DNA from: Macrostomum lignano
Lineage: Eukaryota
NCBI GenBank assembly: GCA_002269645.1
Contig: NIVC01000910.1
Span: forward strand, 322,944 to 386,943
DNA: 64,000 bases
Reading direction: 5' to 3'
The notes beneath the pieces were generated by a model that was not told the origin of the DNA, made no database searches, and saw nothing but the letters and a program-made list of their open reading frames with translations. A program made the translations under genes and the position numbers. Below are positions 21,765-59,232 of the stretch, piece by piece. Position 1 is the first letter of the stretch. Every line of letters starts with the position of its first letter.

Positions 21765-21872
21765 ATGTACGCGTCATCCGGAGCCGGCGGCGAACGGCGC
21801 GGCGACAAGGAGAACTACAAGAAGAAGTCTGGAAAGGAGGCACCGAGCCAGCTTTCGCCTGAAGTGCTTGCT
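21765..21872 (+). CDS. Candidate alternative first coding exon A of DPP6/10-like gene
   Basis: gcaATG. MYASSGAGGERRGDKENYKKKSGKEAPSQLSPE(VLA). Phase-0 donor GCT|gtgagc at 21873, or GAA|gtgctt at 21864. GC-rich island with upstream GC box. Confidence 0.5.
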
Positions 21873-21904
21873 GTGAGCATTTTTATTGTTAGCAGTCAGT
21901 GAAA

Positions 21905-22222
21905 TTGCAATCTAATTATCTGCAGTCTGATTATCTGCAATCTGATTATCTGCAATCTGATTATCTGCAATCTGATTATCTGCAATCTGATTATCTGCAA
22001 TCTGATTATCTGCAATCTGATTATCTGCAATCTGATTATCTGCAATCTGATTATCTGCAATCTGATTATCTGCAATCTGATTATCTGCAATCTGATTATC
22101 TGCAATCTGATTATCTGCAATCTGATTATCTGCAATCTGATTATCTGCAATCTGATTATCTGCAATCTGATTATCTGCAATCTGATTATCTGCAATCTGA
22201 TTATCTGCAATCTGATTATCAT
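21905..22222. repeat. 15-bp minisatellite
   Basis: Unit tctgattatctgcaa, near-perfect copies. Confidence 0.97.
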
Positions 22223-22457
22223 CTGAAATTTATATAAAGAGCATATAAAAGCCTTTGAAGTGAAAGAAAGGAAGCAGTTGATTAATGCTCTTCGTCTTTT
22301 GCTTTCTGATTGCATGTTTTGCCTGAAGCAGATTTACAATTTTTTGATACATTTTTACTAACTAGCATATGCTTCACAGCTGAAACAGCTAGCATTTCAG
22401 GGGGACTAAAATTAGGAATTCAATACGGATTTCTCGAATTGGAGAGTCCACAGATCT

Positions 22458-23205
22458 TCAGTCTCATGTGTCTCAGTCTCATGTGTCTCATGTGTCTCAG
22501 TCTCTTGTGTCTCATGTGTCTCGTGTGTCTCAGTCTCATTTGTCTCAGTCTCATGTGTCTCATGTGTCTCATGTGTCTTGTGTGTCTCAGTCTCATTTGT
22601 CTCAGTCTCATGTGTCTCAGTCTCATTTGTCTCAGTCTCATGTGTCTCAGTCTCATTTGTCTCAGTCTCATGTGTCTCATGTGTCTCAGTCTCATGTGTT
22701 TCAGTCTCATGTGTCTCAGTCTCATGTGTTTCAGTCTCATGTGTCTCAGTCTCATGTGTCTCATGTGTCTCAGTCTCATGTGTTTCAGTCTCATGTGTCT
22801 CAGTCTCATGTGTTTCAGTCTCATGTGTCTCAGTCTCATGTGTCTCAGTCTCATGTGTTTCAGTCTCATGTGTCTCAGTCTCATGTGTCTCAGTCTCATG
22901 TGTCTCAGTCTCATGTGTCTCAGTCTCATGTGTCTCAGTCTCATGTGTTTCAGTCTCATGTGTCTCAGTCTCATGTGTCTCAGTCTCATGTGTCTCAGTC
23001 TCATGTGTCTCAGTCTCATGTGTCTCAGTCTCATGTGTCTCAGTCTCATGTGTTTCAGTCTCATGTGTCTCAGTCTCATGTGTCTCAGTCTCATGTGTCT
23101 CAGTCTCATGTGTCTCAGTCTCATGTGTCTCAGTCTCATGTGTCTCAGTCTCATGTGTCTCAGTCTCATGTGTCTCAGTCTCATGTGTCTCAGTCTCATG
23201 TACTC
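22458..23205. repeat. 15-bp minisatellite
   Basis: Unit tctcagtctcatgtg. Confidence 0.97.
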
Positions 23206-23642
23206 AGCCTGGAAATCGGGTCTAATAATCAGGAATTACTGCAGCATTCCCACATTTAGAATGGGAGCAGTTGAGCTTCATCTGGGCGGAGGAGGCTGCA
23301 GACGCTGTAATTACCGGAAGATGCGGCAGGGAAACGCCGATGGCCTTCACTGCGTAGCCGTCAGAAGCGACAGGGGCGCAGAAAGGGAAGAGACTGAGAG
23401 AGAAAAAATGATCCTCAAAAATCCCACCCATTCCCAAGCCTCCTCGAGCCGCCCCTCAAAGCAAAGGCGATGTTTCATTTTCTCTCTGCTCTCGTCTGCT
23501 TTTTTCGAAAATAAGAAAAAACAAAAGCAGCTGCCAGAGCTTTTGGGAGGGGCGGGAAGAGCAGAGCAGCGGGAGAGGAGACAGCTGAGCACACTGCTAG
23601 CGCACCTGAGCAGCATCTCTGCTTGAGTTGAGTTGAGCGGGC

Positions 23643-23927
23643 ATGTCGGCGCCTCCGGACCCGCTGTTCGAAGACTACGCCAACGACGATGTCATCGCCG
23701 AAGACCCGGACAGCCACTGGCGGCGGCTGCTTCGTCGGCGGCAGGCCGGCCAAGCCGCCACCGCCAGTCGCCAAGGCAACAGCAACAGAGGCGGCGAAGG
23801 CGCTGTTGCTGCAGCGGCCGCTGAGGACAAGGCGGAGCTGGCGGCGACTTGCGGCGGCCAAAAAGCGGCGGCCGGCGGGACGAGCAGGCGGGATGAGGAG
23901 GCGGCCAGGCTGGCGCAGCTGCAGGTG
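23643..23927 (+). CDS. Candidate alternative first coding exon B of DPP6/10-like gene
   Basis: ggcATG. 94-95 codons, MSAPPDPLFEDYANDDVIAEDPDSHWRRLLRRRQ...EEAARLAQLQ(V). Phase-0 donor GTG|gtgagg, or CAG|gtggtg. Strong GC3, coding-like composition. Confidence 0.6.
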
Positions 23928-25039
23928 GTGAGGCGGAGATGGTAGAGAGAGAGAGAGAGAACGTTCGGCAGCCGATATGTTGTGTAGTAGTAAACATAGC
24001 AAAGACTGAGTTTTTTAACTAGAATTTTCTTACTTTTTGACTTGTAGGGGGTCACAGAGGAGTCGCAGAGGGGTCACAGAGGGGTCGCAGAGGGGTCACA
24101 GAGGATTCGCAGGAAGGCAGGGGTCGTGAGCGTCACTCTCTAGAACTAGAGGACCCGGGCTCGATTCTTGATGAGGCTGCGCGTGCATCCTGAAGAGAAT
24201 CTCACCGCTAAGCTTCCCAAAAAATATCCGATTTCGATAAGCAAACCACGCTACTATCAGTAGCTTGAAATTCATACTAGTCGACATTTTATTGCTTGAC
24301 TTGTTCAGAATTTTTTCGACAGTTTTTTTCGGCTGTTCGTCTTACTATTAGTAGCAGCTAACAGACTTTATACGCCACGATGAATACAGAACTTAATTAA
24401 GATGAAAGCTTTGATTTAATTTTGAATTCACTCAGGCCATGTATATTGCACCCAGTGCATGGGTTCTGGGTTTCAGAAATTGTTTCCAAGAGCTGAGACT
24501 CGAACTGAGGACCTCTTGAAAACAATTTAGCTAATACAATTCAACCCAAAATTGAGTCATTTAAAAGAAAACAACTTCAAAGAGGAATTCCGCCACTCGC
24601 TTCTTCTCCTGTGCGCCATCTCCCCGCTCTGTCCGCGGTGCAACAACAATAGAGACAACAATATTACTTTTTGAGTTTGAGGGCGGTACACGGCTGCAAT
24701 GGCCTGACTGCCAACCCTAACAGTGCATTAATAAATCAAGCCATGGTTAGACAAAGAAGGCACCGCATGCTGCTTCTGCTCCTGGGTGCTTGGGCTCCCG
24801 GGGATTTCTGCAGACCTCAGTTCAGTACCGACACTTGACAGCTGGCTAGGTAGGATTTATGAGCATTTGCTCATTGAATTTCTCTGGGAAGAGCATTGCG
24901 TTAGTGTAGATTACCGGTAGACAATAGAATAGTGACAGGATAAATCGTGAGAAGTAGGTAGTATTGAAAAGTAGCTAGTATTATTGCAAGAAGTAGACAG
25001 GAAAATTATAAGAAGGTGATATGAACGTAAGAACCAGAC

Positions 25040-26092
25040 TGTGCTGTGCAACCGTGAGAAACAGACAGTGCAACCATGAGAAACAGATAATGCAATCGTG
25101 AGAAACAGATAATGCAACCATGAGAAACAGACAATGCAACCATGAGAAACAGACTATGCAACCGTGAGAAACAGACAATGCAACCATGAGAAACAGATAA
25201 TGCAACCGTGAGAAACAGATAATGCAACCGTGAGAAACAGATAATGCAACCGTGAGAAACAGATAATGCAACCGTGAGAAACAGACAGTGAAACCGTGAG
25301 AAACAGACAGTGCAACCGTGAGAAACAGACAGTGCAACCGTAAGAAGCAGACAATGCAACCGTGAGAAACAGACAGTGCAACCGTGAGAAACAGACAGTG
25401 CAACCGTAAGAAGCAGACAATGCAACCGTGAGAAACAGACAGTGCAACCGTGAGAAACAGACAGTGCAACCGTAAGAAGCAGACAATGCAACCGTGAGAA
25501 ACAGACAATGCAACCGTGAGAAACAGACAGTGCAACCGTGAGAAACAGACAGTGCAACCGTGAGAAGCAGACAATGCAACCGTGAGAAACAGACAATGCA
25601 ACCGTGAGAAACAGATAATGCAACCGTGAGAAACAGATAATGCAACCGTGAGAAACAGATAATGCAATCGTGAGAAACGGACAATGCAACCATGAGAAAC
25701 AGACTATGCAATCGTGAGAAACAGACAATGCAACCATGAGAAACAGACAATGCAACCGTGAGAAACGGACAATGCAACCGTGAGAAACAGATAATGCAAC
25801 CGTGAGAAACAGATAATGCAACCGTTAGAAACAGATAATGCAACCGTGAGAAGCAGACAATGCAACCTTGAGAACTAGACAATGCAATCTTGAGAAACAG
25901 ACAATGCAACCGTGAGAAACAGATAATGCAACCGTTAGAAACAGATAATGCAACCGTGAGAAGCAGACAATGCAACCTTGAGAACTAGACAATGCAATCT
26001 TGAGAAACAGACAATGCAACCGTGAGAAACAGACAGTGCAACCGTGAGAAACAGACAATGCAACCTTGAGAACTAGACAGTGCAATCGTGAG
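25040..26092. repeat. 22-bp minisatellite
   Basis: Unit tgcaaccgtgagaaacagacaa. Confidence 0.96.
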
Positions 26093-26424
26093 AATTGTCA
26101 TATTAACAAAAGTAAGAATTATCTGAAATTACTGTCAGCATAATGCCACCACTCCGCAATTGGACAGAGTTCAACAACTCCATTGCTGACAAATTCAAAG
26201 CCGCTCTGCTCACACCGAGAGAGGCCGCAAAGTGGAGGGTGGAAGGCGAGCTCCAGTCCAAATCCACCATGGCTAGCTGTGGTTGGCTAAGGTTGGCCCC
26301 ATTGGTTGCATATTATTACTGTATATGTAAGCTTAGCCTTCTAAATCGCTGGGGCTATCGACACAGTCGACGTGTTTCAGTCGCGTTGAGTTTCTTATAA
26401 ATTAATAAATAGCTGATAAAAGTC

Positions 26425-26598
26425 ATGTTCGCCGCTCGCGTCACGGTCGGCGGCAGAGGCGGTGGCGGCGGCGGTGGTGGCGGCGGGGGAGGCGACGATC
26501 ACGTCGGTGATGGCGGCGGCGGCGGTAACGGTGCCCTGCTGAAGGGGCGGTTCAACAGGCGCACGGAGAACGTTGACACCGTGTTCGAGAATATGGAG
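26425..26598 (+). CDS. Candidate alternative first coding exon C of DPP6/10-like gene
   Basis: gtcATG. 58 codons, MFAARVTVGGRGGGG...LLKGRFNRRTENVDTVFENME. Phase-0 donor GAG|gtgaga. The C-terminal motif is paralogous to exon D. Confidence 0.7.
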
Positions 26599-27789
26599 GT
26601 GAGAACAGGAGCCGCCAATAGAGACTAAGCGCCAAGAAGGTCCTGGGTTCGAGTCGGATTAGTGCCCAGGTGGATTTAACACAAGTCGACTAGCAATCCA
26701 ACGAATAAAGCTATTATTAAGCACCAAGAAGGTCCTGGGTTCGAGTCTAGTTAACGAGCCTGGTGTCAATAAAAAATATAAGAAATGCCAATCGAAAAAA
26801 TGTTGCAAAAGACCCAATTCAGAGAAGCCCCATAACTTTTTGAACAAAAAAAATCTCTGAAAAAATCAGTGCCCAAAGTTTAAAAATCTCGAAGTGCTAA
26901 CGCAGCTAGATTCTGTTTCCCTCCCCCGGCCAGCGCCCAAAGTAAAAAAATTCCGGAATGCTGGTTCCCTGTGGCTGCGCTATCATAAAACTTCAGCGGC
27001 TATTTTAAGTTTCATGTTTAGTAACTCCTGAGAGTCAATGCAACAGCAATGGAAAACCAATAAATTAGGCACTGATTTGGGCAGACATTTTCTGCTTTTA
27101 ACTCTATCAAGCCGATCCCAGAACGCATTGCAGAATGCGCGGGCTGTTCCGCGCAGCTGGCATAGGGAAGAGGCGGGTCGGCCTGTCCCGCGGATGCATC
27201 GCATAAAACTCCGCAAGCAGGGTGGGGAGGTGAAGAGACGGGAGAGATAGCCGAAGATCCGGCACGGCGCCTCCACTTGCTCGGCTGAGTGCAGCGTGCG
27301 CGATGAAAATAAAATATTCATTGGACAACTGAGGCCCCGGAATGGATTGAGAAGGAAATCGGTTGGGGAGGATACGAGTGGCAGTGGGAAGCGACCTGGA
27401 ATCTGGATAAAAGTTCCATGCTTAGCTTGTTCATCTCAGAAAAGTTTGTCATGGCCTGCGGATGATCAGAGGCTCAGCTGTGCTCATGCGAACTGCATGA
27501 GATCTGAATGAGTTATACTAAATTTTCCTTGTGGTTTGATGCTGCCATTGAATATAAAAAATATGGAAAGCATTTATGATAGAAGGAGGGAAAGGAGGGT
27601 GAGAGATATAAGAATAAGGTAGGATAGAAAAAAACGATGGGAGACGAAAGAGGAGAGAGGAGAGAAGAGAGAGAGGAGAGGGAGAGAGGGGGAGAGGAAA
27701 GAGTCTTAACCCCAAAGCATTGACGCGGTGACGCAGATGTTAAAGCGATATTGTTTATTCTTCCTCAGGGCTAATATGAGTATGCAACT

Positions 27790-29589: not shown

Positions 29590-29802
29590 CTTTGCGTACT
29601 CTGTGTACATCGTTGCTCATTCACTATTCCCTCGTGCATGCCTTATCTCTGTCACCCACCCCAATGCTATGCTGCGATGCTTATTAATGTGTTTTCTGAT
29701 CTTAGGTTGACTTCAATAAACTTTTGTCACAACTGAGAGCTAAAGCGATTGACTTTCACTTGGCGTCGCAAGCAGGATAGCGCACGCCTGCATACTGCCA
29801 GA

Positions 29803-32151
29803 ATGTCGATTAAGATTCGCGATCAACTGCCTTTGGATAATGTGGACGAACTGCGAGCCTGGGTAGAAGTGTTCGACGCTCAGGCAAGGTCCAAAGGAGT
29901 CAAAGACGAGGGGAACAACCTCGGCCTGACAGACGCATTTCTAGGATCGCTGGGCGTAAGTCAATTTATGAAGGTGAAACAGCTGGTTGCTCCAAAGAAG
30001 ATCGCAGGAATGCTGTGGGAGGACATCAAGAAAAGTCTTTTCAAGTATCTGGAGCCCAAGAAGAGGCTTCTGATAGCCGAGAGGACAGCATTCATGGCCA
30101 TGAGACAAGTCGATGGAGAGACTGTGGCCGGCTTCACTGCCAGATTGCGAGAACAGGCCATGGTTTGCGAGTTCGAGAAGTTCAAGGAAGAGCAGGCGGA
30201 CCCGGCTGAGCAGCTGATCAAGATGCGCCTCATCGCTGGCCTAGTTAGCCAGGACACGAGAAACAAGGTTCTGGAGCGTGAGATGACGCAAGAGCTGACT
30301 GTAGATCAGATCACTGAGTTTGTTCAGCAGCTGCAACTGGTCAACGACTTCACGACACCAACATCGGCAGCTCAGAACATCGGAGCATCAACTCAGCCAG
30401 CTGTGCATCAGGCGGTGTCACAAGAGCTGGAGCAGCAATCGGCTCACACCGTTCACCAGTTCAAGGGCAAGTGTGGAAGATGCGGCTTGGCTCAGCATCG
30501 TAACGTGTCAGAATGTCGGGCCCTGAAAGCTGCTTGCCACAAGTGCGGAAAGCAGGGACACTTTGCCAGGGCATGTCGCAGCACCGCCAAGGCGCACTTC
30601 ACGGAGCCCGAAGCCAACCCGGATGAAGCTGTGTTTTTCTGCACTGAAGGCAAGCCAGCTGATTTCTGCTTTGTGAAGATCAACGGTAAGCTGGTAAAAA
30701 TGGAGAGGGACAGTGGCGCCTCCTGCTCATTGATCTCCAAGAAAATCTGGATCGACCTTGGAAGACCAGCACTCAAGAAGCCGAAGTCACGCATGCTGTC
30801 ATATGATGGTCACGTGATGAGACAGCTTGGCCTCCTACAGTGCTTGGTGGAGACTGAAGGCAACAACGGGAGATTTGCGACAATGGAACTCCCGGTGATA
30901 GACTGTCACCAGCAATTCGGTCTCCTGGGCCGGAATCTGCTAAGCAGCCAGCAGATGCATCATTTGGAGGAGGTGAACAACAAATATCTGAAGTTGGCTG
31001 GAATCAAGGGCGCGGTTGGAGAGATCCGACTCAAGTCCAGCGCCGAGCCAGTGTTTCAACCGGCCCGTGAGCTTCCCATGGCATTGAAACCGCTAGTGAA
31101 GAAGGAACTCGACCTAATGGAGGCGGCTGGAATTGTTGAGAAAGTGAACTCATCGGAGTGGGGCAGCCCGATCGTGGTCACCGTCAAGCCTGGCCGGGAG
31201 ACAGTGAGGATCTGCGGCGACTACACCACCGTCAATCAGCTGATACAAGGCCAGACGTATCTAACACCCTCCATTGAGATGGCCTTTTCAAAGGTTGCCA
31301 ACAAGAAGTTCTTCTGTCACCTGGATCTGTCAGACGCCTACTACCAGATTCTCCTGGATGAGCAGTCCAAGGCGGTCACCACCATCAACACCCCGTTCGG
31401 CTGCTACCGCTTCAGCAGACTGCCCTACGGTATCAAGGTGTCACCATCAGTCTTTCAGCGTGAGATGGAGAAACTGATCGGTGAGCATCCGAGTGTTATT
31501 ACTTATCAAGATGATGTGCTGATTGGTGGGAGTTCTACGTTAGAGCTGCAGCAGATCAGGGAAAGTGTCTTGAAAAGACTGCGAGAGGCCAATGTCAAAA
31601 TTAACGAGTCAAAGTGCGTTATGGAGGCTAGCAGCCTGAAGTTTCTTGGGCACGTCATCGATGCGGAAGGCATCAAACCAGACCCAGGGATGGTTGAGAG
31701 AGTGCTACAGGTAGCCAGCCCCAAGAGTAAAAAGGACCTAGAGAAGTTTCTAGGACTTGCACAGTTCTACGGCAGACTGATTCCCAACTTCTCCGAGCGC
31801 TGCCGAGTATTGCATGAGCTGAGGAGGAGCGACAGTGCATTCGATTGGAGCCCGGCAGCCGAGGCTGCCTTTGCCGAAGTAAAAGCATGTCTCGCCTCCA
31901 AGCCGTGTGTCAAGCCATACGACATCAACGCGCCAGTCTGCCTTCGAGTTGATGCTAGTGAAAAATCCATAGGCGCTGTTCTGACTCAAGCAGGTCACCC
32001 AGTGATGTACCTATCGAGGATGCTCACCTCCGCGGAGTCCAACTACTCTAACATTGAAAGGGAAGCACTAGCTATAGTTTGGGCAGTTGAGCGAGCGAAG
32101 AAAATGTTGATCGGGAAAAATTTATCTTGCAAACGGATCATGAACCTCTGA
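29803..32151 (+). CDS. Gag-Pol part 1 (Gag with 2 Cys/His knuckles, protease, RT, N-part of RNase H)
   Basis: ATG at 29803 (MSIKIRDQ). Motifs: CHKCGKQGHFARAC, protease DSGAS, RT VRICGDY / LDLSDAYYQI / LPYGIK / YQDDVL, RNase H VDASEKSIGAVL / YSNIEREALAIVWAV. Confidence 0.88.
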   Translation: MSIKIRDQLPLDNVDELRAWVEVFDAQARSKGVKDEGNNLGLTDAFLGSLGVSQFMKVKQLVAPKKIAGMLWEDIKKSLFKYLEPKKRLLIAERTAFMAMRQVDGETVAGFTARLREQAMVCEFEKFKEEQADPAEQLIKMRLIAGLVSQDTRNKVLEREMTQELTVDQITEFVQQLQLVNDFTTPTSAAQNIGASTQPAVHQAVSQELEQQSAHTVHQFKGKCGRCGLAQHRNVSECRALKAACHKCGKQGHFARACRSTAKAHFTEPEANPDEAVFFCTEGKPADFCFVKINGKLVKMERDSGASCSLISKKIWIDLGRPALKKPKSRMLSYDGHVMRQLGLLQCLVETEGNNGRFATMELPVIDCHQQFGLLGRNLLSSQQMHHLEEVNNKYLKLAGIKGAVGEIRLKSSAEPVFQPARELPMALKPLVKKELDLMEAAGIVEKVNSSEWGSPIVVTVKPGRETVRICGDYTTVNQLIQGQTYLTPSIEMAFSKVANKKFFCHLDLSDAYYQILLDEQSKAVTTINTPFGCYRFSRLPYGIKVSPSVFQREMEKLIGEHPSVITYQDDVLIGGSSTLELQQIRESVLKRLREANVKINESKCVMEASSLKFLGHVIDAEGIKPDPGMVERVLQVASPKSKKDLEKFLGLAQFYGRLIPNFSERCRVLHELRRSDSAFDWSPAAEAAFAEVKACLASKPCVKPYDINAPVCLRVDASEKSIGAVLTQAGHPVMYLSRMLTSAESNYSNIEREALAIVWAVERAKKMLIGKNLSCKRIMNL

Positions 32152-33581
32152 GATATATTTTCAACCCGAGCAAAAGCCTGTCAAAAACAGCGTCAGCTAG
32201 GCTGACTAGATGGGCCTTAAGACTATCTGCATTCGATTACTCTGTGGAATACATTCCAGGAAAGCAGCTGCTGGACGCTGATGCCTTGTCAAGGCTCAAC
32301 TACACTGCAGAAGCCGATGAGGACACGGTGCATCAAGCGGATTCAGTGCTGAGCGCAGATGACTGCGGCGCGTCTGGGCTGGTGACTCAGCAGGAGCTCC
32401 GGGAAGCCACCCTGAACTGCTCGGTGCTGAAGAGACTGCAACAGAGAATCCGAACCGGGCGTTGGGGTCAAGTTTCTCAGGTCGAGCGACCCTTTAAAGC
32501 CTGTAGAACTTCTTTGTCGACTGATAACGGCTTGGTGATCCATGGAACTCGAGTGGTACCTCCAGCAGTGCTTCGTCGGCGGATTCTGGAAGCGGCTCAT
32601 GATGAAGTGCATCCTAGCTTTGAGAGCACTAAGGCCCACATCTGCAAGGAATTCTGGTGGCCTGGATTGGATCGAGATGTGCGACAGTATGTGGAGAGAT
32701 GCCGGACATGCGCTGAGTCCCGCCCACTGTCTAATCGCAAAATCGACATTTGGCCACCGGAGACAACTCCATGGAGCCGCGTCCACATGGACCACTGCGA
32801 AGTCTCCGGAGTCGGCCTGCTGCTGCTACTGTCGGACGCTTACTCAGGCTGGCCTGAAGCCATTCAGGTTCCGGACAAGTCGACGGATACGGTCATGAGA
32901 GTCCTGAGAGCTGTCTTTGCTCGCAACGGTGTGCCGCAAACCTTAGTATCCGACAACGCACCAGAGTTTAAATCGACCCGGCTGTCTCAGTGGCTGGACT
33001 CAATCGGCTGCAGGGAGGTCCACACTCCGCCATATCACCCGGCATCAAACGGACAGGCTAAGCGGCTCGTAAGGAGCCTGAAGGACGGCCTGAGAACTTG
33101 GAACCGAGTTGTCCCATTTCAACAATTTCTGCAGAAGTTGCTCCTGACTGTGAGGACTGGCCGGCCGAGTGGATCTAGACCAGCGTCACCGGACATCATG
33201 ATGTGGGGGAGGAGGCTGCGTCATCCTCTATCAATGCCCGAACAAGTCGGAGATGCCATCTGGCTTCGGATGCGCCCAGAGACCGGACCCGTCAAGGCCA
33301 AGTTCGTGGTTCAGCATGGCCAAAATACTGCTCTGGTGACGCCAACTGATTTGCCATCTGGAGGACTGCGCCTGGCCCACCGCAACCAATGGAGCGACCG
33401 TCCAGAGAATCAGGAGGATGACAGCACTGGCGAGCCTGAGCATCTGCAGCCCCCAGCTGGTACATCCAAGATGGTCGTTCCGGAACCAGCTGATGAGCCA
33501 ACGTTTCAGAACTACAGTGCGAATACTGGTGGGCCTTCCTATGAGCTCCGACCAAGACGTCCGGTCTGCTACAAGTGCTAG
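32127..33581 (+). CDS. Pol part 2 (RNase H C-part, integrase) in the -1 frame
   Basis: TDHEPL...RWALRLSAFDY, HHCC zinc finger (H..HPS...CRTC), catalytic VHMD / LVSDNAPEF / SNGQAKR. The usual Glu of SNGxAER is Lys (AAG at 33060). Confidence 0.85.
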   Translation: MQTDHEPLRYIFNPSKSLSKTASARLTRWALRLSAFDYSVEYIPGKQLLDADALSRLNYTAEADEDTVHQADSVLSADDCGASGLVTQQELREATLNCSVLKRLQQRIRTGRWGQVSQVERPFKACRTSLSTDNGLVIHGTRVVPPAVLRRRILEAAHDEVHPSFESTKAHICKEFWWPGLDRDVRQYVERCRTCAESRPLSNRKIDIWPPETTPWSRVHMDHCEVSGVGLLLLLSDAYSGWPEAIQVPDKSTDTVMRVLRAVFARNGVPQTLVSDNAPEFKSTRLSQWLDSIGCREVHTPPYHPASNGQAKRLVRSLKDGLRTWNRVVPFQQFLQKLLLTVRTGRPSGSRPASPDIMMWGRRLRHPLSMPEQVGDAIWLRMRPETGPVKAKFVVQHGQNTALVTPTDLPSGGLRLAHRNQWSDRPENQEDDSTGEPEHLQPPAGTSKMVVPEPADEPTFQNYSANTGGPSYELRPRRPVCYKC

Positions 33582-34344
33582 TTTGATGGGGGGCAGTGTT
33601 GGACTCTGACTGACTCTGATCTTTTTTGGACTGTGGGCTCTGGGGTTGGTGCTTGGGGTGGGTTATTTGTCTGGTGAGGGTTTGCGTACTCTGTGTACAT
33701 CGTTGCTCATTCACTATTCCCTCGTGCATGCCTTATCTCTGTCACCCACCCCAATGCTATGCTGCGATGCTTATTAATGTGTTTTCTGATCTTAGGTTGA
33801 CTTCAATAAACTTTTGTCACAACTGAGAGCTAAAGCGATTGACTTTCAATAATGTTTAGATTTTCGATAATTCTGAGGTAACTGCAAAACAAGATTGTGT
33901 TTTTCTCGCGCTTTCAGGCCCAAAGTCAAGCGCTTTGCTCAAAGCAAGTTTGCTTTTTCTATTTACGGAAACGCTGAAATCTCCAACAGAATAAATTGGC
34001 TACTGGACAGGAATATGCAACAGACTGAGGGGCACAGAGACGGTGGGGAGAGAGGGTGAGCGAGAGCGTGCTCCAAGGCCATTGTGAAAGCGCAGTTGTC
34101 CCGAGCTGCCACAAAGAGAATGAATTTCCTGAGTGAACCTGACTTGGCAGTGACGTGCGCGACTCTCTTGCTTTTGGGGCCGTCTGTTCTCCACTGTGAG
34201 AATGCTTTCTGAGTGGATATAAATGTATCGCAGCGGCAAGTAATTTCTTGGAGCAGCTTAAAGAGCGCTGAGAGAAAACGCGCTTTAGAAAGGCAGAAGC
34301 GATTTAGAAAGCAAGTATAGCCTTAGGTCAGCATTGTGAGCGAA

Positions 34345-34485
34345 ATGCTGGCCAGCAGATCGGGCGCCATGCCTTCAGGGGGCAACCGCGGCAGCAGCGG
34401 CGGCGGCGGTGGTGTCGGTGGACGGACTACTCATCAGCAGCTGCTGAGGACAGAGACGGTTGATCAGACATTTGACAGGCTGGAG
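34345..34485 (+). CDS. Candidate alternative first coding exon D of DPP6/10-like gene
   Basis: gaaATG. 47 codons, MLASRSGAMPSGGNRGSSGGGGGVGGRTTHQQLLRTETVDQTFDRLE. Phase-0 donor GAG|gtgagg. Paralogous to exon C. Confidence 0.7.
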
Positions 34486-34495
34486 GTGAGGCGCG

Positions 34496-36060
<1,565 letters not shown>

Positions 36061-38420: not shown

Positions 38421-38462
38421 ATGAGCGAGTCCGAGTACAATGACGACTTGGACGCGGATGAG
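38421..38462 (+). CDS. Candidate alternative first coding exon E of DPP6/10-like gene
   Basis: gagATG. 14 codons, MSESEYNDDLDADE. Phase-0 donor GAG|gtaggg. Confidence 0.6.
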
Positions 38463-38649
38463 GTAGGGGCCTTTCTTAGGCTATCCTATATGTTAATGCT
38501 TTGCCTAGCCAGTGCTAAATTTATATGTTGAGGAGTAAAAATATGATATATTTATTGTACTGCACTCGGCTGCACCCTGTAACAGTTAGAACAGCTATAT
38601 AAGCTGTTAAAAAGTAGACGAAGCAGCGCCTCGTTTTTGAGAATGCGAA

Positions 38650-39065
38650 GAATAGATGAGAAAGAAAAGAGACGAGAGGAGAAGGAGAGAAAAGAGAAGA
38701 GAGAGAAGAGATAGGAGGGAGAGGAGAGATGAGAAAGATAAGAGAGGAGAGATGAGAAAGAAGCAAGGACAGACGGGAGAGAAGAGAGGAGAGATGAGAG
38801 AGAAGAGAGGAGAGATGAGAAAGAAGCAAGGACAGACGGGAGAGAAGAGAGGAGAGATGAGAGATGAGAGATGAGAGATGAGAGATGAGAGAGAAGAGGG
38901 ATATACGAGAGAGAAGAGAGGAGAGATGAGAGAGATGAGAGGATATACGAGAGAGAAGAGAGGAGAGATGAGATGAGAGAGATGAGAGGAGAGATGAGAG
39001 ATGAGAGATGAGAGCGGAGGGAGAGGAGAAATGAGAGAGGAGAGAGGAGAGAGATTTAAGAAGAG
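38650..39065. repeat. Purine-rich low-complexity repeat
   Basis: GAGAT/GAGAG units with internal duplications. A separate (GA)n tract lies at 39364-39445. Confidence 0.88.
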
Positions 39066-39359
39066 GCAGAAGAGGAAGCCCAAGACCTAGACCGGACAAC
39101 TGGGCTAGGGTTTTGCGACCTGTTATGGGTGGACTGCGCGCAACTCAAGTAATCTAAGGGCCCAGTTTTGTTTCTAAGAAAATATGACTCTCAAATCTCC
39201 TCATCACTGCCAAGTAAAATTTGGGGAGCTAAAAAATAAACTGCAATAAAACCTGTAGTTGAGAAACTGTTACAAAAATAACTAAAACTAAAACTAAATA
39301 CAAAGTGCTCTTAGTCATGTCAGCTCAGTCCCCCCCCGAACTGCTGCACAGAGGGAGAC

Positions 39360-39430
<71 letters not shown>

Positions 39431-42400: not shown

Positions 42401-42699
42401 AACCTATTTTTTCATGCATTTCATATTTTTGTGCGTCGCAGATAATGCTGTTTGAATACTCCTGTGTGATCAATATTTTAATGCGCTCACATGCTAAATG
42501 CAAGCAGCAGGTGCAGACATCAGCTGAACAGAGATTGCAGTCGACTTTTCTCTCGAAGAATTGAAAGCAAATTAAATAATAACGTGAATTGTTAAACAAT
42601 GATGGTCTTCAATCACTTATTGGATTGAGTTTCCATGCATACAGATTAGCTTGTACACATTAGAAAAGGTAGCGTTGCTTTCTAACGGACAGAATTCAG

Positions 42700-44282
42700 C
42701 GGATCTACTGACAGACAGACAGAAGGGAACTCAGCGCATCTACTGACAGACAGACAGAAGGGAACTCAGCGCATCTACTGACAGACAGACAGAAGGGAAC
42801 TCAGCGCATCTACTGACAGACAGGCAGAATGGAATTCAGTGCATCTACTGACAGACAGGCAGAATGGAATTCAGTGCATCTACTGACAGACAGACAGACA
42901 TACAGAAGGGAACTCTGCATCTACAGACATACAGACAGAAGGGAAATCAGCGTATCTACTGACAGACAGACAGAAGGGAACTCAGTGCATCTACAGACAT
43001 ACAGACAGAAGGGAAATCAGCGCATCTACTGACAGACAGACAGAAGGGAACTCAGTGCATCTACTGACAGACAGGCAGAAGGGAACTCAGCGCATCTACT
43101 GACAGACAGACAGAAGGGAACTCAGCGCATCTACTGACAGACAGGCAGAAGGGAACTCAGCGCATCTACTGACACACATACAGAAGGGAACTCAGCGCAT
43201 CTACTGACAGACATACAGAAGGGAACTCAGCGCATCTACTGACAGACAGAAAGACATACAGAAGGGAACTCAGCGCATCTACTGACAGACAGGCAGAAGG
43301 GAACTCAGCGCATCTACTGACACGCATACAGAAGGGAACTCAGCGCATCTACTGACAGACATACAGAATGGAAATCTGCGCATCTACTGACTGACAGGCA
43401 GAAGGGAACTCAGTGCATCTACTGACAGACAGGCAGAAGGGAACTCAGCGCATCTACTGACAGACAGACAGACATACAGAAGGGAACTCAGCGCTTCTAC
43501 TGACTGACAGGCAGAAGGGAACTCAGCGCATCTACTGACAGACAGGCAGAAGGGAACTCAGCGCATCTACTGACAGACAGACAGAAGGGAACTCAGCGCA
43601 TCTACTGACTGACAGGCAGAAGGGAACTCAGTGCATCTACTCACAGACAGGCAGAAGGGAACTCAGCGCATCTACTGACACACATACAGAAGGGAACTCA
43701 GCGCATCTACTGATAGACAGACAGACATACAGAAGGGAACTCAGCGCATCTACTGACAGACAGACAGACATACAGAAGGGAACTCAGCGCATCTACTGAC
43801 AGACAGGCAGAAGGGAACTCAGCGCATCTACTGACACACATACAGAAGGGAACTCAGCGCATCTACTGACAGACAGGCAGAAGGGAACTCAGCGCATCTA
43901 CTGACACACATACAGAAGGGAAATCAGCGCATCTACTGACAGACAGACAGAAGGGAACTCAGCGCATCTACTGACAGACAGACAGAAGGGAACTCAGTGC
44001 ATCTACTGACAGACAGACAGAAGGGAACTCAGCGCATCTACTGACAGACAGACAGAAGGGAACTCAGTGCATCTACTGACAGACAGACATAAGGGAACTC
44101 AGCGCATCTACTGACAGACAGACAGAAGGGAACTCAGCGCATCTACTGACAGACAGACAGAAGGGAACTCAGCGCATCTACCGACAGACAGACAGAAGGG
44201 AACTCAGTGCAACTACTGACAGACAGACAGAAAGGAACTCAGTGCATCTACAGACAGACAGACAGAAGGGAACTCAGCGCTG
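42700..44282. repeat. ~35-43-bp minisatellite
   Basis: Unit ctactgacagacagacagaagggaactcagcgcat with a variable (GACA)n core. Confidence 0.96.
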
Positions 44283-44645
44283 ACAGTCTCGCAGACAGTG
44301 TGGAACAGAACATACAGCCTAGGAATTGAAGACCTAGCGTTCAAGGGCTCCCCTCTCTTCCTTAGCACACTGGCTGCTGGCAGGCTCTGTATAACCAGCT
44401 GAACGCTGACTGGCTGGAGGAGACGGGCCACAGGCAAGCGACAGCTCGGGCCTGGCCAGTCACAGAGCTTCCAAGGGGAACCCAAGTCTTTCAGACGCTG
44501 TGCGGGGGTCTATCGGCTGTTCCTGAGCGGCCGCTGATAAACGGTTGAACACCGGAGCTGTCATAAAAGACCCATATCCTTGTCTAGCAACAGCACTGCT
44601 AGGCATTGAACTAAGCTAACTTTAACAGTACCGGCTTCAGTTGCT

Positions 44646-44684
44646 ATGGACGCGGCAAAGCAACAGGCGGTGCCGCTCAACGAA
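44646..44684 (+). CDS. Candidate alternative first coding exon F of DPP6/10-like gene (most proximal)
   Basis: gctATGg. 13 codons, MDAAKQQAVPLNE. Phase-0 donor GAA|gtgagt. Confidence 0.62.
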
Positions 44685-44974
44685 GTGAGTTCGATACGAA
44701 TGGTTCTAATTGTCTACCTGTAGCTACCCTGCTTACTCAAATGAATCTATCTGCCTGTCTACCAGTACCAGATCATATACTTTCCAGGCACGTGTATGTA
44801 CCTTGGTTGATAAATAGTAACAATTTGCTTCAATGAGCGAGTTTGGGTGTGCTAAAGATCTGGAATATCAAAGTGGGCACTCAAACAACTTTGTACCTGT
44901 GCATATGTATATAAAAGAACTTCGATAATATTTAACTACTTACTTACCTACCTACCTACCTACCTACCTACCTA

Positions 44975-46788
44975 CCCGGCGGTAAAAATCACGTCGAAAT
45001 GACGTCGATATTCGCCTTTCAAAAACTTGCGACAAATGAGTAGTCGTTTGAACCTTCATTTGACGTCGAAATTTCGATATGAAATTTTTATCTTCTTTTT
45101 TGCAGAAATAATTATTAGTGATATTTGAAAAATATTTTTTCAACGTGATTTTCAGTGTATTGAAAGGATCAATAAATTCAGTAAAACTGACACAACGTTT
45201 TTTTTGTTTCAACGCATCGCGAGATACACCTTTTTAAAAATATCGCCATGCTGAATGTCGATCTATTATTTGTCAATTGCAGACTTCCAAATTATTTTAC
45301 TGCGATTCATACGTAAATCTTTAACGTAAATTTTCTGTAACAAACATGGCAATTCATATTCTTTAATTGCGTTTCATTATTTTTTCGATAATTAATGTAA
45401 TATACAATTTATGCGTTTAAAGTTCGATGTTTTATAATACTGTTGCTTATAGGACGGATAGGTTTAACTTTTTATACAGGATAAGTGAATTAATAATAAA
45501 GTAGCCATAAATTAGCAACTTTTTACGTTTTAGTACAGCTTATTGGAAATTAATAATAGTGTAATATTTAATAAACAATAATAGATTAGCTTTTATAAAT
45601 GTAATAAAAGCACAATTCTATAGCTAAAAGAATGTTTGTTATGAAAAATTTTTTAGGACATTTAGGACATAGACGTAATTATAATTTTAGCCTAAATAGT
45701 ATATATAATTATCCCATTTAAACATTAATTATTTAATTATTCATTCTAATATATGTTTGTTACATTCTAAATAAAAGCATAGCCCAACCCATAACTGCTC
45801 ATGAAATAACTAGAACAGCTATAGCATTTAAGTACCTTATCGCCAGCATCTAGAGCATGAAATACTACTCATACTATAATTATCTATTTTTTCTATGTAA
45901 TGAAAACAGGATATACTATGTAACTATGCTATAAAAACTTTTATAAATGCTCTATATGGCCCAGGAATATATAGAACATTGTATAGCATTTTACTTGTTT
46001 AGTAAAGCCGCTGCTTACTCTACCAAAAATTCCAGCAAATGCCCCTCTGTCAACTCGGCGGCTGAGGACGTCCTACGTGACCGCACAAGACGCAAAAGCT
46101 GAATTTCCGTGTGGAGTAACCGCGCAGACGCCGTTGATTTTCAGTGTTTCCCTTTCACGATTACAATATGTTGAATTACATTTAGTTGCATTTGTTGACA
46201 TTGTTGTTCCTTATTTTTCCATCGTCTATTTTCTATTCTTGATAGCTTTGATGCTATTTCTATGATCGTTTCCAATTGCTGGTGAATTGAATATACACTG
46301 TATACTTTTTCATGGTTGCAGGATAATAGGATCTGGTTTGGATAGCAAATGAAACGTCATGCAGCCTTGCTTGGCATTTTATGCTTAAATATTTCTTTCC
46401 TATTTAGGTAGATTAGTGACTTTAGTGTATGGATTAACATTTATGTTTCGTCAGCTTAGTTCGTTTGTAGATCGTACATGTAGTTCGTCAGTTTATAACT
46501 ATTGAAAAAAATAACTTTTTATAACTATGAAACTAATGCACTACAGTATATTATTAATATTAATTAGTATATGTAGATAAAAATCGTCAATTTGTCGAAA
46601 ATCGCCATCTACTTGCGGTCATCATGAATATGAACGACGTCGACTTTTCGCCATCAATAGTGGAAAACGCGACGTCGCACACTCTACATCTGATGGCGAA
46701 AATTTCGACGTCGAAATCGTGGTTCAAATCGACATGAAATTTCGACGTCGCTTTTCGACGTCATTTCGACGTGATTTTTACCGCCGGG
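44975..46788. mobile_element. Non-autonomous DNA transposon with TIRs, TA-flanked
   Basis: TIR CCCGGCGGTAAAAATCACGTCGAAATGACGTCG at the left end and its reverse complement at the right. TA on both sides, inside a (TACC)n tract. AT-rich interior with no transposase ORF recognised. Confidence 0.9.
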
Positions 46789-47478
46789 TACCTTCCTACC
46801 TACCTACCTACCTATCTACCTACCTACCTATCTATCTATCTATCTATCTACCCACCTACCTACCTACCTGAGGCCAATCAGTGTAGATATCTATTAACCA
46901 AGTCCTCAGACAGCCACATTTGCTGGCCCTGTGCAGCACAGTCAGACCTGCAATCCAGACGCTAAACTAGAAGACGATCGCACCACTTGAGGCCGCTAGC
47001 AATCTGACAGCAAGCGAGAATATTTTGGCTGCTCTTATTGCGTTCTAAAGCAATAAAGCAAATCAATTTCCTTCACCCCTTTCTGCGTAGCAACAATAAG
47101 CATTTTATGCTTGCCTGCGCTTTCTTGATTATTGTATTTGCTCATCCGGGGTTGGGAGGGTGTTTCGGCTCCTTTGATCTCTGGTCGGAGAGAGGTTAGG
47201 AGGTTCGGTCTTCCCAATCTATTGATTCTACAGTCAGTCTATTGCCTCAAAATGCCCCGCTTGTATCCAGGCCAGCTGGTGTCTCTCTTCAGAATTCAAA
47301 TTTGTTTTTGTTTGCAACTTTTCACTTTTCACTGTACATTAAATCTTATCACAGTGCTTTAACTGAGACCATTTGACATCAGCTTAGAAGAGTAGCCTAA
47401 AAACCTTTTTAAGGAAGCTTTGCCATAGACAGCGGTCGCAGACAATCTTTGTAGCTCGTATACTTTTACGCAAAAGAA

Positions 47479-47782
47479 GGGGGTTGTAGCCCAGCAGTCG
47501 TTAGAGCGTCGGGCTCACGACTGAAAGGTCGCGGGTTCGATTCGCGACCCACACGGAACAATTTATGTCTTTGAGCAAGACACTTAACTCTGCATTGCTT
47601 CAGTTCACCCAGCTGTAAAATGGGTGCCAGCATTAGCTGGGGTAATTGAGGGTGTGCGGCGACCCCCCAGTCCTTGGACTGAACAGCCGTACGCAGCCTT
47701 CAGATGGGCCGCGCAAAGCTGCGGCTGAGCTGTCGGTTGCACATCTGGCCCAATTGGGGCAGGTGTAATCAATTATTATTAT
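47479..47782 (+). mobile_element. tRNA-derived SINE with CORE-like domain
   Basis: A-box-like tagcccagcagtcg and B-box ggttcgattc. The segment tgtctttgagcaagacacttaactc...cagctgtaaaatggg resembles the CORE domain. Ends in an (ATT)n tail. Confidence 0.8.
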
Positions 47783-47804
47783 ACCCACATTCCAAAATCC
47801 TCAG

Positions 47805-47919
47805 GAGCTGGTTGGCAACGCGCCGGCGCAGAAGAATCTCAGAGGCGTCGTCATAGCCGTGGTGGTGATCGTCTCCATTCTGGCCCTGATCGGAGCGGCA
47901 ATTTTGTGGTTAACGCCGA
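47805..47919 (+). CDS. DPP6: DPP6/DPP10-like: shared exon with type II transmembrane helix
   Basis: Phase-0 acceptor ctcag|GAG and donor A|gtgagt. ELVGNAPAQKNLRGVVIAVVVIVSILALIGAAILWLTP matches vertebrate DPP6 exon 2 as recalled ([38 protein letters not shown]). The symbol denotes the DPP6/DPP10 group, not strict orthology. Confidence 0.88.
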
Positions 47920-59195: not shown

Positions 59196-59232
59196 GCTGA
59201 AAGATTAACACTTGATTTTCACCTTTTCCCAG

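What the first reader, a model, noticed from the sequence alone, without database searches (positions are those of the whole stretch)
21765..47919. Array of at least six alternative first exons feeding one DPP6/DPP10-like transmembrane exon
Seen: six separate GC-rich islands over 23 kb (21765, 23643, 26425, 34345, 38421, 44646). Each has an ATG with G at -3, a short stop-free frame and a GT donor in phase 0. Most end on Glu (..ME|, ..LE|, ..DE|, ..NE|, possibly ..PE|). The first recognisable internal exon downstream is the phase-0 acceptor at 47805 (ELVG... plus TM helix), and no other gene body was recognised in the interval. Established: vertebrate DPP6/DPP10 use alternative first exons spliced onto this same ELVG/ELGS exon to vary the cytoplasmic N-terminus that tunes Kv4 channel gating. 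Inference: this invertebrate locus runs a promoter-choice 'variable N-terminus / constant ectodomain' system with a 13-95 aa repertoire. It could be ancestral or independently expanded.
Basis: partly seen in the sequence, partly recalled or inferred. Interest (0 to 1): 0.85.

Follow-up and report, generated by a model that had tools for sequence, protein, structure and literature searches.

The report
Candidate alternative first exons, flatworm DPP gene
This is the 5' end of a flatworm (Macrostomum lignano) membrane dipeptidyl-peptidase gene; one of the six proposed start exons is already annotated, and the other five look like real coding exons but have no transcript evidence.

Summary
The window is Macrostomum lignano contig NIVC01000910.1 (100% identity). 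The downstream gene is BOX15_Mlig008602g1 (PAA74979.1, 850 aa), a type II membrane peptidase of the DPP4/FAP/DPP6/DPP10 family.

There are more of them than chance predicts: 7 on the + strand, 1 on the - strand, 2.1±1.5 in shuffles. Each has coding-like codon usage in the proposed frame.

E5 (38421-38462) spliced to 47805 is exactly the transcript-based GenBank CDS start, at this locus and at two homeologous loci. Its acidic peptide also begins a mollusc homologue.

E2, E3, E4 and E6 keep their ATG, frame and donor in both homeologs, although nearby non-coding DNA carries about 6.5 indels per kb. E3 and E4 are paralogues. E1 rests on codon usage alone.

No annotated or database protein joins E1-E4 or E6 to the TM exon. 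E1-E4 could instead splice into in-frame acceptors just upstream of E5.

The gene is DPP6-like in its TM and propeller parts but keeps the catalytic triad motifs. The interval also holds an intact LTR retrotransposon and a TIR element.

Verdict: partly supported. This is an invertebrate example of a known gene layout, of modest interest.

The parts
21765..21872 (+). E1, candidate alternative first coding exon. Peptide MYASSGAGGERRGDKENYKKKSGKEAPSQLSPEVLA, donor GTGAGC. A shorter form ends at 21863 (donor GTGCTT). This is the weakest candidate.
   Evidence: ATG, frame and donor. Codon-usage z 2.1. A strong acceptor-like tract, ccctctccccacgcag|, lies 18 nt upstream of the ATG. E1 falls outside the homeolog loci, so conservation was not tested.
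23643..23927 (+). E2, candidate alternative first coding exon (95 aa). Donor GTGAGG at 23928.
   Evidence: An in-frame TGA lies 2 codons upstream with no phase-0 acceptor between it and the ATG, so in this frame E2 can only be a first exon. Codon z 4.6-4.8. The ORF is intact in both homeologs despite 12 substitutions (6 synonymous, 6 not) in L003 and one 3-nt in-frame deletion in L001. The flanks carry many indels. The GTGAGG donor is conserved; the 23924 GT is lost.
26143..26291 (+). ORF X (MPPLRNWTEFNNSIADKF...). It is coding-like and is used as an exon in the ML2 ab initio model, but has no strong phase-0 donor. Status unknown.
   Evidence: z 2.6. Identical in all three homeologs. No Pfam match.
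26425..26598 (+). E3, candidate alternative first coding exon (58 aa). It ends ...RTENVDTVFENME|GTGAGA and is a paralogue of E4.
   Evidence: E3/E4 similarity, shuffle p<0.001. Codon z 3.4-3.6. The ATG frame is more coding-like than the frame used in the ML2 model. The ORF is intact in the homeologs, but it sits in a nearly identical 1.5-kb block, so that conservation says little.
29591..33848 (+). Intact Ty3/gypsy-type LTR retrotransposon. Not part of the gene. It is inserted between E3 and E4.
   Evidence: Gag-protease-RT-RNaseH and integrase ORFs. The 168-nt LTRs are 100% identical and a TGGCG primer-binding-site-like motif follows the 5' LTR. Absent from both homeologs.
34345..34485 (+). 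E4, candidate alternative first coding exon (47 aa). It ends ...RTETVDQTFDRLE|GTGAGG and is a paralogue of E3.
   Evidence: Codon z 2.2-2.3. The ORF is intact in the homeologs, with only Gly-run substitutions. A TATAAAT lies at -127.
38421..38462 (+). E5, the annotated first coding exon (MSESEYNDDLDADE). Donor GTAGGG.
   Evidence: The GenBank CDS of PAA74979.1 starts here and joins 47805. The start is identical in the homeologs. The same type of N-terminus occurs in mollusc P0281 and in other homologues. Phase-0 CAG acceptors end at 38375 and 38381.
44646..44684 (+). E6, candidate alternative first coding exon (MDAAKQQAVPLNE). Donor GTGAGT. It lies inside the annotated E5-to-TM intron.
   Evidence: Codon z 1.8. 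The peptide is unchanged in the homeologs, with 2 synonymous substitutions in L003. A cttcag| acceptor 5 nt upstream of the ATG matches the M. lignano spliced-leader acceptor motif. A paralogue model, P0124, starts MDTRKHTQLPD|ELVG.
44973..46790 (.). AT-rich element with 51-nt terminal inverted repeats. Not part of the gene. It is inserted in a (TACC)n tract between E6 and the TM exon.
   Evidence: About 1.8 kb here against about 0.36 kb in the homeologs.
47805..47919 (+). Constant exon 2: juxtamembrane ELVGNAPAQKNLRG plus TM helix. Phase-0 acceptor, phase-1 donor GTGAGT.
   Evidence: Two synonymous substitutions in each homeolog.
58449..63889 (+). Further constant exons of the annotated CDS, encoding the DPPIV_N propeller: 58449-58558, 59232-59357, 59448-59516, 59955-60017, 60218-60316, 61191-61314, 61702-62099, 63752-63889. 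Ends are ±1-2 nt where a codon is split. The gene runs on past the window end.
   Evidence: Exact mapping of P0272 onto the window. Pfam DPPIV_N.

Best explanation
The interval is the 5' region of M. lignano gene BOX15_Mlig008602g1. The gene encodes a type II membrane serine peptidase of the S9B family (DPP4, FAP, DPP6, DPP10).

Shown: the main annotated mRNA starts its coding sequence at E5 (38421) and splices E5 directly to the TM exon at 47805.

Inferred: E2, E3, E4 and E6, and less surely E1, are real, conserved, ATG-initiated coding exons in phase 0. They give alternative cytoplasmic N-termini on one constant TM and ectodomain body. Their 5' ends would come from separate promoters or from spliced-leader trans-splicing at acceptors just upstream of some of the ATGs.

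Each may splice straight to 47805. E1-E4 could instead splice through the in-frame acceptors upstream of E5. E3 and E4 arose by exon duplication and keep a shared motif, RTExVDxxFxx[ML]E, which would sit next to the membrane-proximal ELVG.

What the variants do is unknown. By analogy they would change trafficking or partner regulation, as the N-termini of vertebrate DPP6 and DPP10 do.
For: 1. Locus and E5 junction. Window 28421-64000 equals L002 at 100%. L002 is the locus of PAA74979.1 (GCA_002269645.1, NIVC01000910.1), and its CDS start falls at window 38421. P0272 maps exactly as E5 + 47805-47919 + later exons. The two homeologous genes have the same start. The annotation is transcript-based (PMC5730564).

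2. Enrichment. 7 units on the + strand, 1 on the - strand, 2.1±1.5 in shuffles.

3. Codon usage. Composition-matched z scores are 2.1, 4.7, 3.5, 2.3, 2.2 and 1.8 for E1 to E6. Of 26 other ATG-to-GTRAG ORFs outside the retrotransposon, 25 score 1.2 or less and one scores 2.15. ORF pieces of the retrotransposon score 3.3-3.7.

4. Homeologs. ATG, frame and donor of E2, E3, E4, E5 and E6 are kept in L001 and L003. The only indel in 2 x 681 nt of exon is a 3-nt in-frame deletion. Background non-coding DNA has 6.3-6.9 indel events per kb, about 80% of them not multiples of three. Pooled dN/dS is 0.33 against L003 (p=0.023).

5. E3/E4 paralogy. Three of the DNA differences within the shared motif are synonymous third-position changes.

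6. E2 can only be a first exon in its frame.

7. The same boundary elsewhere. Two ML2 models of a 47-53% identical paralogue start with an E5-like peptide (MSETAECQNDVGDLDAEE|ELVG) and an E6-like peptide (MDTRKHTQLPD|ELVG). Crinoid RefSeq isoforms X1/X2 and X3 differ only upstream of ELVG. Vertebrate DPP6 and DPP10 use alternative first exons.
Against: - No transcript or junction evidence exists for E1-E4 or E6.
- The transcript-based GenBank annotation calls no gene upstream of E5 at any of the three loci, and its longest product is the 850-aa E5 form.
- Exact look-ups of the hypothetical proteins E1-, E2-, E3-, E4- and E6-to-TM, and E4-E5-TM, found nothing among about 15 billion proteins.
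- The only model that contains E2-E4 (A0A1I8I163) joins them in series with E5.
- Substitution rates in the candidate exons are not lower than in their flanks. dN/dS against L001 is 0.76 and not significant.
- E3 lies in a block that is nearly identical among the copies, so its conservation is uninformative.
- The scan criteria and z threshold were set after seeing the six.
- GGC-rich microsatellite content contributes to E3 and E4.
- Promoter motifs are weak.
Confidence: 0.5

Rival explanations
1. Only E5 is a functional first exon. E1-E4 and E6 are GC-rich, open, ATG-containing stretches. They would be relics of old exons or by-products of GGC-rich low-complexity DNA near regulatory regions, and are not part of any stable mRNA.
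For: The transcript-based annotation has only the E5 form at three loci and calls no gene upstream. No database protein carries these N-termini except one ab initio model. Substitution rates in the exons roughly equal those in the flanks. About 2 such units are expected by chance. E1, E5 and E6 are very short.
Against: All six have coding-like codon usage in the proposed frame, and only 1 of 26 control ORFs does. No frameshifting indel occurs in 2 x 681 nt, although about 7 would be expected from the background rate. dN/dS is 0.33 against L003. The E3/E4 motif is kept through synonymous changes. Whole-animal short-read assemblies often miss rare or cell-type-restricted first exons.
Confidence: 0.25
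2. Serial or hybrid splicing. E2 (or E1) is the true upstream start, and E3, E4 and E5 are internal in-frame cassette exons joined in series, as in UniProt A0A1I8I163. This gives a long cytoplasmic tail of 150-260 aa. The short E5-first mRNA comes from an internal promoter or from trans-splicing.
For: The ML2 model P0001 chains E2, X, E3, E4, E5 and TM. Phase-0 AG acceptors lie between the in-frame stop and the ATG of E1, E3, E4 and E5. The E5 tract, ccccag|, looks like a strong acceptor and the frame into E5 is open. All units are phase 0 at both ends, so any combination keeps the reading frame.
Against: P0001 needs two 1-nt indels, in E2 and E3, that are absent from the Mlig_3_7 copies. These are probably ML2 assembly errors, so part of its path is an artefact. 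The acceptors for E3 and E4 are weak (TAG with an A/G-rich tract) and are formed by the in-frame stop itself. E2 has no usable acceptor, and E6 has none with a strong signal. Every unit starts with a well-placed ATG within 2 to 24 codons of an in-frame stop. TransDecoder would have reported a longer ORF if serial transcripts had been assembled. The E4-E5-TM protein is not in the collection.
Confidence: 0.2
3. E1-E4 belong to one or more separate, unannotated upstream transcripts, coding or non-coding, and are unrelated to the peptidase gene.
For: They lie 4-17 kb upstream of the annotated CDS start, with repeats and a retrotransposon in between.
Against: No terminal exon, stop-containing exon or other recognisable coding body lies in the interval. 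All the donors are phase 0, matching the single phase-0 acceptor at 47805. No gene is called there in GenBank.
Confidence: 0.05

Closest known systems
Vertebrate DPP6 (DPPX) and DPP10 (DPPY) genes: alternative first exons (DPP6a, K, L, D, S; DPP10a-d) spliced to a common exon 2 that encodes [14 protein letters not shown] plus the TM helix
   Same: Both encode type II membrane proteins. Both have a constant exon that starts at ELVG and carries the TM helix. At least one short ATG-containing first exon is spliced onto it in phase 0 (E5). Further candidate first exons spread over tens of kb would give 13-95 aa tails. The propeller region scores best against DPP6 (137 bits), then DPP10 (111), then DPP4 (80-87). 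The literature basis is PMC3973911 and PMC3366920.
   Different: The catalytic motifs GWSYGG, GDDNVH and DEDH are kept, and the catalytic domain is closer to FAP/DPP4. None of the flatworm N-terminal peptides resembles the vertebrate exon 1 peptides. Only one first exon has transcript support here. A Kv4 partnership was not tested.
Drosophila DPP10 orthologue (Sci Rep 2016, PMC4873792)
   Same: It is an invertebrate member of the family that keeps peptidase activity and also acts as a Kv4 ancillary subunit (abstract). That makes it the best functional analogy for a catalytically intact, DPP6-like protein.
   Different: The paper describes no N-terminal isoform array. I did not establish orthology to the flatworm gene.
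RefSeq isoforms of 'prolyl endopeptidase FAP-like' in the crinoid Anneissia japonica (XP_033113541-43)
   Same: Two different N-terminal peptides, MRTYATIDGSGINKDSQSMGLLGWFQ and MNIFNTIFLYRSLKLM, join the same ELVGGHQEQRNWKG-TM sequence. Alternative first coding exons at this same boundary are therefore already visible in an invertebrate annotation.
   Different: There are two variants rather than six. They are predicted isoforms from an automated pipeline. Their peptides do not resemble E1-E6.
Variable/constant first-exon arrays made by tandem exon duplication (UGT1A, clustered protocadherins)
   Same: Several ATG-containing 5' exons lie upstream of one shared acceptor. One pair, E3 and E4, is clearly paralogous.
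   Different: Only one pair is paralogous. The exons are tiny cytoplasmic tails rather than whole domains. A promoter for each exon is not shown.

Membership tests
Peptidase family S9B (DPP4, FAP, DPP6, DPP10) | DPPIV_N beta-propeller followed by a Peptidase_S9 alpha/beta-hydrolase domain | tested here: met
   For P0272, Pfam gives DPPIV_N at 2.5e-63 and Peptidase_S9 at 5.3e-42. The window itself encodes residues 1-425.
Peptidase family S9B (DPP4, FAP, DPP6, DPP10) | Type II topology: short cytoplasmic N-terminus, then a single TM helix | tested here: met
   The exon 47805-47919 encodes ELVGNAPAQKNLRG followed by a hydrophobic stretch of about 23 residues. It aligns to the DPP6 TM region. No topology predictor was run.
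Active DPP4/FAP-type enzymes | Catalytic triad motifs GWSYGG (Ser), DDNVH (Asp) and a His near the C-terminus | tested here: met
   VFGWSYGG, HGTGDDNVH and PDEDHS align with the FAP motifs. FAP and DPP4 score 175 bits, DPP6 142 and DPP10 128. This part of the protein lies beyond the window end, in the annotated protein of this same locus.
DPP6/DPP10 (DPLP) Kv4 auxiliary subunits | Loss of the catalytic serine (GKDYGG or GKGYGG; 'inactive' peptidase) | tested here: not met
   GWSYGG is present.
DPP6/DPP10 (DPLP) Kv4 auxiliary subunits | Juxtamembrane and TM exon [14 protein letters not shown]... that follows the variable exon | tested here: met
   It aligns to DPP6 residues starting at ELVG. 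The motif is not specific to DPP6/10, because it also occurs in many invertebrate homologues.
DPP6/DPP10 (DPLP) Kv4 auxiliary subunits | Several alternative first exons, each spliced to the common exon 2 | tested here: inconclusive
   The E5-to-47805 junction is shown by the annotation. E1-E4 and E6 have sequence-level support only and are absent from annotations.
DPP6/DPP10 (DPLP) Kv4 auxiliary subunits | Binds and modulates Kv4 (Shal) channels | not testable with these tools
   This needs co-expression and electrophysiology.
Alternative-first-exon (variable/constant) arrays | Each variable exon has its own transcription start or 5' end | tested here: inconclusive
   TATAAAT lies at -29 (E3) and -127 (E4), and GC boxes lie upstream of E1 and E2, but this is not significant. 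Acceptor-like tracts upstream of E1, E5 and E6 would fit spliced-leader trans-splicing. No 5'-end data were available.
Alternative-first-exon (variable/constant) arrays | Variable exons are mutually exclusive in mature mRNA | not testable with these tools
   This needs junction reads or long reads. Serial splicing is compatible with the reading frame.

The most novel reading that the evidence does not exclude
A flatworm DPP6-like peptidase that is still catalytically intact runs a true array of at least five or six alternative N-terminal exons. The array would include an ancient acidic 'YxDD..E' exon shared with molluscs, and a lineage-specific duplicated pair that carries a conserved membrane-proximal motif. 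If so, exchanging the cytoplasmic N-terminus on a constant TM and ectodomain body predates the vertebrate DPP6/DPP10 split and the loss of catalysis. It would be an ancestral bilaterian way of tuning this protein's partners.
Probability: 0.3. Interest if true: 0.5.

Novelty: new member of a known kind. Interest (0 to 1): 0.35.

Why it matters
If the extra exons are used, this would be an invertebrate case of the 'variable N-terminus, constant body' layout known from vertebrate DPP6 and DPP10. It would sit in a protein that still has its catalytic triad. That would place the origin of N-terminal diversification before the loss of enzyme activity, and probably before the split of protostomes and deuterostomes.

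M. lignano can be made transgenic, so promoter choice and the role of each tail could be tested directly.

As it stands, the certain part (E5 spliced to the TM exon) is already in GenBank. The rest is a well-motivated annotation hypothesis, not a surprise.

Tried and rejected
1. Word-index protein searches, one with a chimera of all six peptides plus constant exons and one with the constant part, returned only the ML2 model P0001 and distant bacterial hits. They missed the GenBank proteins, which appeared only in the full HMMER scan. Absence is therefore weak evidence.

2. The look-up of encoding contigs for P0001 found nothing on record.

3. P0001's reading frames in E2 and E3 looked at first like evidence against the ATG frames. 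They are reproduced by single 1-nt indels that are absent from the Mlig_3_7 homeologs. I rejected them as probable ML2 assembly errors.

4. All-against-all comparison of the six peptides found only E3/E4 significant. E2/E5 gave p≈0.1 and E4/E6 p≈0.02 on four residues; I did not rely on either.

5. Promoter motif counts (TATA, GC box) were not significant.

6. The spliced-leader sequence, Rfam families and tRNAs gave no hits in the window.

7. Pfam scans of other long ORFs in the interval found nothing except the retrotransposon.

8. An exact look-up of the upstream GPCR ORF, meant to reach homeologous DNA covering E1, failed. E1 conservation is therefore untested.

9. Gene identifiers Mlig002127 and Mlig008602 appear in no searchable paper, and no supplement was held for the trans-splicing paper.

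11. The paralogue (P0124, P0163) exists only as UniProt ML2 models with no DNA available. I could not test whether it keeps the same exon order.

Full report
**What the window is.** The best database match to the constant exons was a Macrostomum lignano protein. A full HMMER scan then found three 850-aa GenBank proteins of the Mlig_3_7 assembly: PAA76838.1, PAA89369.1 and PAA74979.1. Fetching their loci showed that window 28421-64000 is 100% identical to L002. L002 is NIVC01000910.1:351364-410678, so window coordinate w equals contig position 322943 + w. PAA74979.1 (BOX15_Mlig008602g1) maps exactly onto the window:
- 38421-38462
- 47805-47919
- 58449-58558
- 59232-59357
- 59448-59516
- 59955-60017
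- 60218-60316
- 61191-61314
- 61702-62099
- 63752-63889, and onward past the window end.

The GenBank annotation comes from a genome-guided transcriptome (StringTie/TACO, TBONE, TransDecoder; PMC5730564).

**The observation.** All six units have an ATG with G at -3 and an open frame. All have a phase-0 GT donor. Five donors are GTGAG, which matches the M. lignano donor motif GT[G/A]AG (PMC8629364). An in-frame stop lies 2 to 24 codons upstream of each ATG, and the acceptor at 47805 is phase 0.

A strict scan found 7 such units on the + strand of 12.5-47.8 kb and 1 on the - strand. Flanking segments gave 0 to 2, and block-wise dinucleotide shuffles gave 2.1±1.5, with 1 of 200 reaching 7. The seventh unit sits in an AG microsatellite and does not look coding (z 0.2). 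The 'ends on Glu' pattern mostly reflects the (G)AG|GT donor consensus read in phase 0.

The claim that the interval has no other gene body is wrong in detail. It holds an intact Ty3/gypsy-type LTR retrotransposon (29591-33848). It also holds an element with terminal inverted repeats (44973-46790).

**What is established: E5.** The annotated CDS starts at 38421 and joins 38462 to 47805. So one of the six proposed junctions is already in GenBank. The two homeologous loci, L001 and L003, have the same start.

The E5 peptide MSESEYNDDLDADE is an old N-terminus. A bivalve homologue begins MGSEYDDFED|ELVG (P0281). Several unnamed homologues begin M..(N/I)YDD(E)|ELV (P0139, P0142, P0150). A 47-53% identical M. 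lignano paralogue model begins MSETAECQNDVGDLDAEE|ELVG (P0163).

**What is inferred: E1-E4 and E6.** I trained a codon-usage model on verified coding sequence in the window (the GPCR and the constant DPP exons) and scored each unit against shuffles matched for its own composition.
- E1 to E6 scored z = 2.1, 4.7, 3.5, 2.3, 2.2 and 1.8.
- Of 26 other ATG-to-GTRAG ORFs on both strands outside the retrotransposon, 25 scored 1.2 or less and one scored 2.15.
- ORF pieces of the retrotransposon scored 3.3-3.7.

The homeologous loci lack the retrotransposon, so they reach back to window position ~22660 and cover E2 to E6.
- ATGs, frames and donors are all intact in both copies.
- Across 2 x 681 nt of candidate exon the only indel is a 3-nt in-frame deletion in E2.
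- Aligned non-repeat, non-exon DNA shows 6.3-6.9 indel events per kb, about 80% not multiples of three. About 7 frameshifting events would therefore be expected.
- The two comparisons are not independent, and indels cluster. A conservative estimate from one comparison is p≈0.03.
- Pooled dN/dS is 0.33 against L003 (9 non-synonymous and 9 synonymous differences, p=0.023). Against L001 it is 0.76, with few differences.

E3 and E4 are paralogues. They end RTENVDTVFENME|GTGAG and RTETVDQTFDRLE|GTGAG, and three of the DNA differences are synonymous third-position changes. In shuffles the similarity has p<0.001.

E2 has a stop 2 codons upstream of its ATG and no acceptor in between. In its frame it can only be a first exon. 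Its real donor is the GTGAGG after 23927, because the GT after 23924 is GC in both homeologs.

E6 keeps its peptide through two synonymous changes in L003. A paralogue model starts with the loosely similar MDTRKHTQLPD|ELVG (P0124). E1 lies outside the homeolog loci and rests on codon usage alone.

**What argues against the array.**
- No gene is called upstream of E5 at any of the three loci, and the longest recorded product is the 850-aa E5 form.
- The hypothetical proteins E1-, E2-, E3-, E4- and E6-to-TM, and E4-E5-TM, are absent from a collection of about 15 billion proteins.
- Substitution rates in the exons are no lower than in their flanks. E3 lies in a 1.5-kb block (25900-27400) that is almost identical in all copies.
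- The only model that includes E2-E4, UniProt A0A1I8I163 from the ML2 assembly, joins E2, X (26170-26291), E3, E4 and E5 in series. Part of that path depends on 1-nt indels in E2 and E3 that the Mlig_3_7 copies do not have. The frame it uses in E3 is not coding-like. The model is therefore unreliable.
- The serial idea itself is not excluded. Phase-0 AG acceptors lie between the in-frame stop and the ATG of E1, E3, E4 and E5. The tract upstream of E5 (ccccacag atcccag ccccag|) looks like a strong acceptor with an open frame.
- About 30-39% of M. lignano genes are trans-spliced to a leader that ends in ATG. These tracts, and the cttcag| 5 nt upstream of the E6 ATG, could equally be trans-splice sites.

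**What the gene is.** The TM exon and propeller region score best against DPP6 (137 bits), then DPP10 (111), DPP4 (80-87) and FAP (78). The catalytic domain scores best against FAP and DPP4 (175 bits), ahead of DPP6 (142) and DPP10 (128). It keeps GWSYGG, GDDNVH and DEDH.

So this is not an 'inactive' DPP-like protein. The closest functional analogy is the fly DPP10 orthologue, which is both a peptidase and a Kv4 subunit (PMC4873792). The ELVG..NW[KR]G juxtamembrane motif is widespread in invertebrate homologues with very different N-terminal lengths. Crinoid RefSeq isoforms differ only upstream of ELVG. Alternative first coding exons at this boundary are therefore probably ancestral, and are already visible in public annotation.

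**Verdict.** E5 spliced to 47805 is known. E2, E3, E4 and E6 are probably real coding exons of this gene, and most plausibly alternative 5' exons. E1 is weaker. Whether they splice directly to the TM exon, each from its own promoter, is unproven, and a serial or hybrid arrangement through E5 remains possible. I put about 0.5 on the array reading, 0.25 on 'E5 only', 0.2 on serial or hybrid splicing and 0.05 on a separate gene. Interest is modest: this is a new, partly predicted member of a known gene layout.

Noticed in passing
window 29591-33848 (+): An intact Ty3/gypsy-type LTR retrotransposon. Its ORFs of 800 and 484 aa carry a zinc knuckle, protease, RT, RNase H and integrase. The 168-nt LTRs are 100% identical and a TGGCG primer-binding-site-like motif follows the 5' LTR. 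It is absent from both homeologous loci, so it is a very recent insertion upstream of the annotated gene start, in the same orientation as the gene.
   Followed up: partly
window 44973-46790: An AT-rich element (about 27% GC) of about 1.8 kb with 51-nt terminal inverted repeats (86% complementary). It is inserted in a (TACC)n microsatellite between E6 and the TM exon. The homeologs have only about 0.36 kb at this spot.
   Followed up: partly
window 10847-11968 (+): An intronless ORF of 373 aa for a rhodopsin-family GPCR (7tm_1, E 5e-72). It has DRY and NPxxY motifs and a Gly/Arg-rich third loop, and looks aminergic. The exact ORF is not in the protein collection.
   Followed up: partly
window 25900-27400: A 1.5-kb block holding ORF X and E3. 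It is almost identical in the three homeologous copies (0-0.7% divergence, almost no indels), against about 3% divergence elsewhere. Either selection or recent gene conversion could explain this.
   Followed up: no
window 26143-26291 (+): ORF X (MPPLRNWTEFNNSIADKFKAALLTPREAAKWRVEGELQSKSTMASCGWL). It has an ATG with A at -3, codon-usage z of 2.6, and is identical in all copies. The ML2 model uses it as an exon. It has no strong phase-0 donor and no Pfam match. It could be a further 5' exon with a different splicing phase.
   Followed up: partly
window 34496-36051; 25047-26094; 42692-44280; 22458-23201; 21906-22220; 48490-48992: Very large tandem arrays sit in the introns. (GTA)~519 begins only 10 nt after the E4 donor. 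There are also a 22-mer x48, a 35-mer x44 and several 15-mers. Array lengths differ between the homeologs.
   Followed up: no
UniProt A0A1I8I163 (P0001) against window 23803 and 26471: The ML2-assembly gene model differs from the Mlig_3_7 sequence by single-nucleotide indels in GC-rich exons. It therefore uses wrong reading frames and invented splice paths. This shows how assembly errors carry over into UniProt models for this species.
   Followed up: yes
L001 43159-50977, L002 51460-59315, L003 42964-50820 (- strand; beyond the window end): The downstream neighbour at all three homeologous loci is a gene for a protein of about 718 aa with EH and EF-hand domains, on the opposite strand. Synteny is kept.
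   Followed up: no
P0166, P0276, P0277 (Anneissia japonica XP_033113541-43): Crinoid 'FAP-like' isoforms carry two different N-terminal peptides joined at the same ELVG boundary. Alternative first coding exons at this position therefore exist in another invertebrate annotation.
   Followed up: partly
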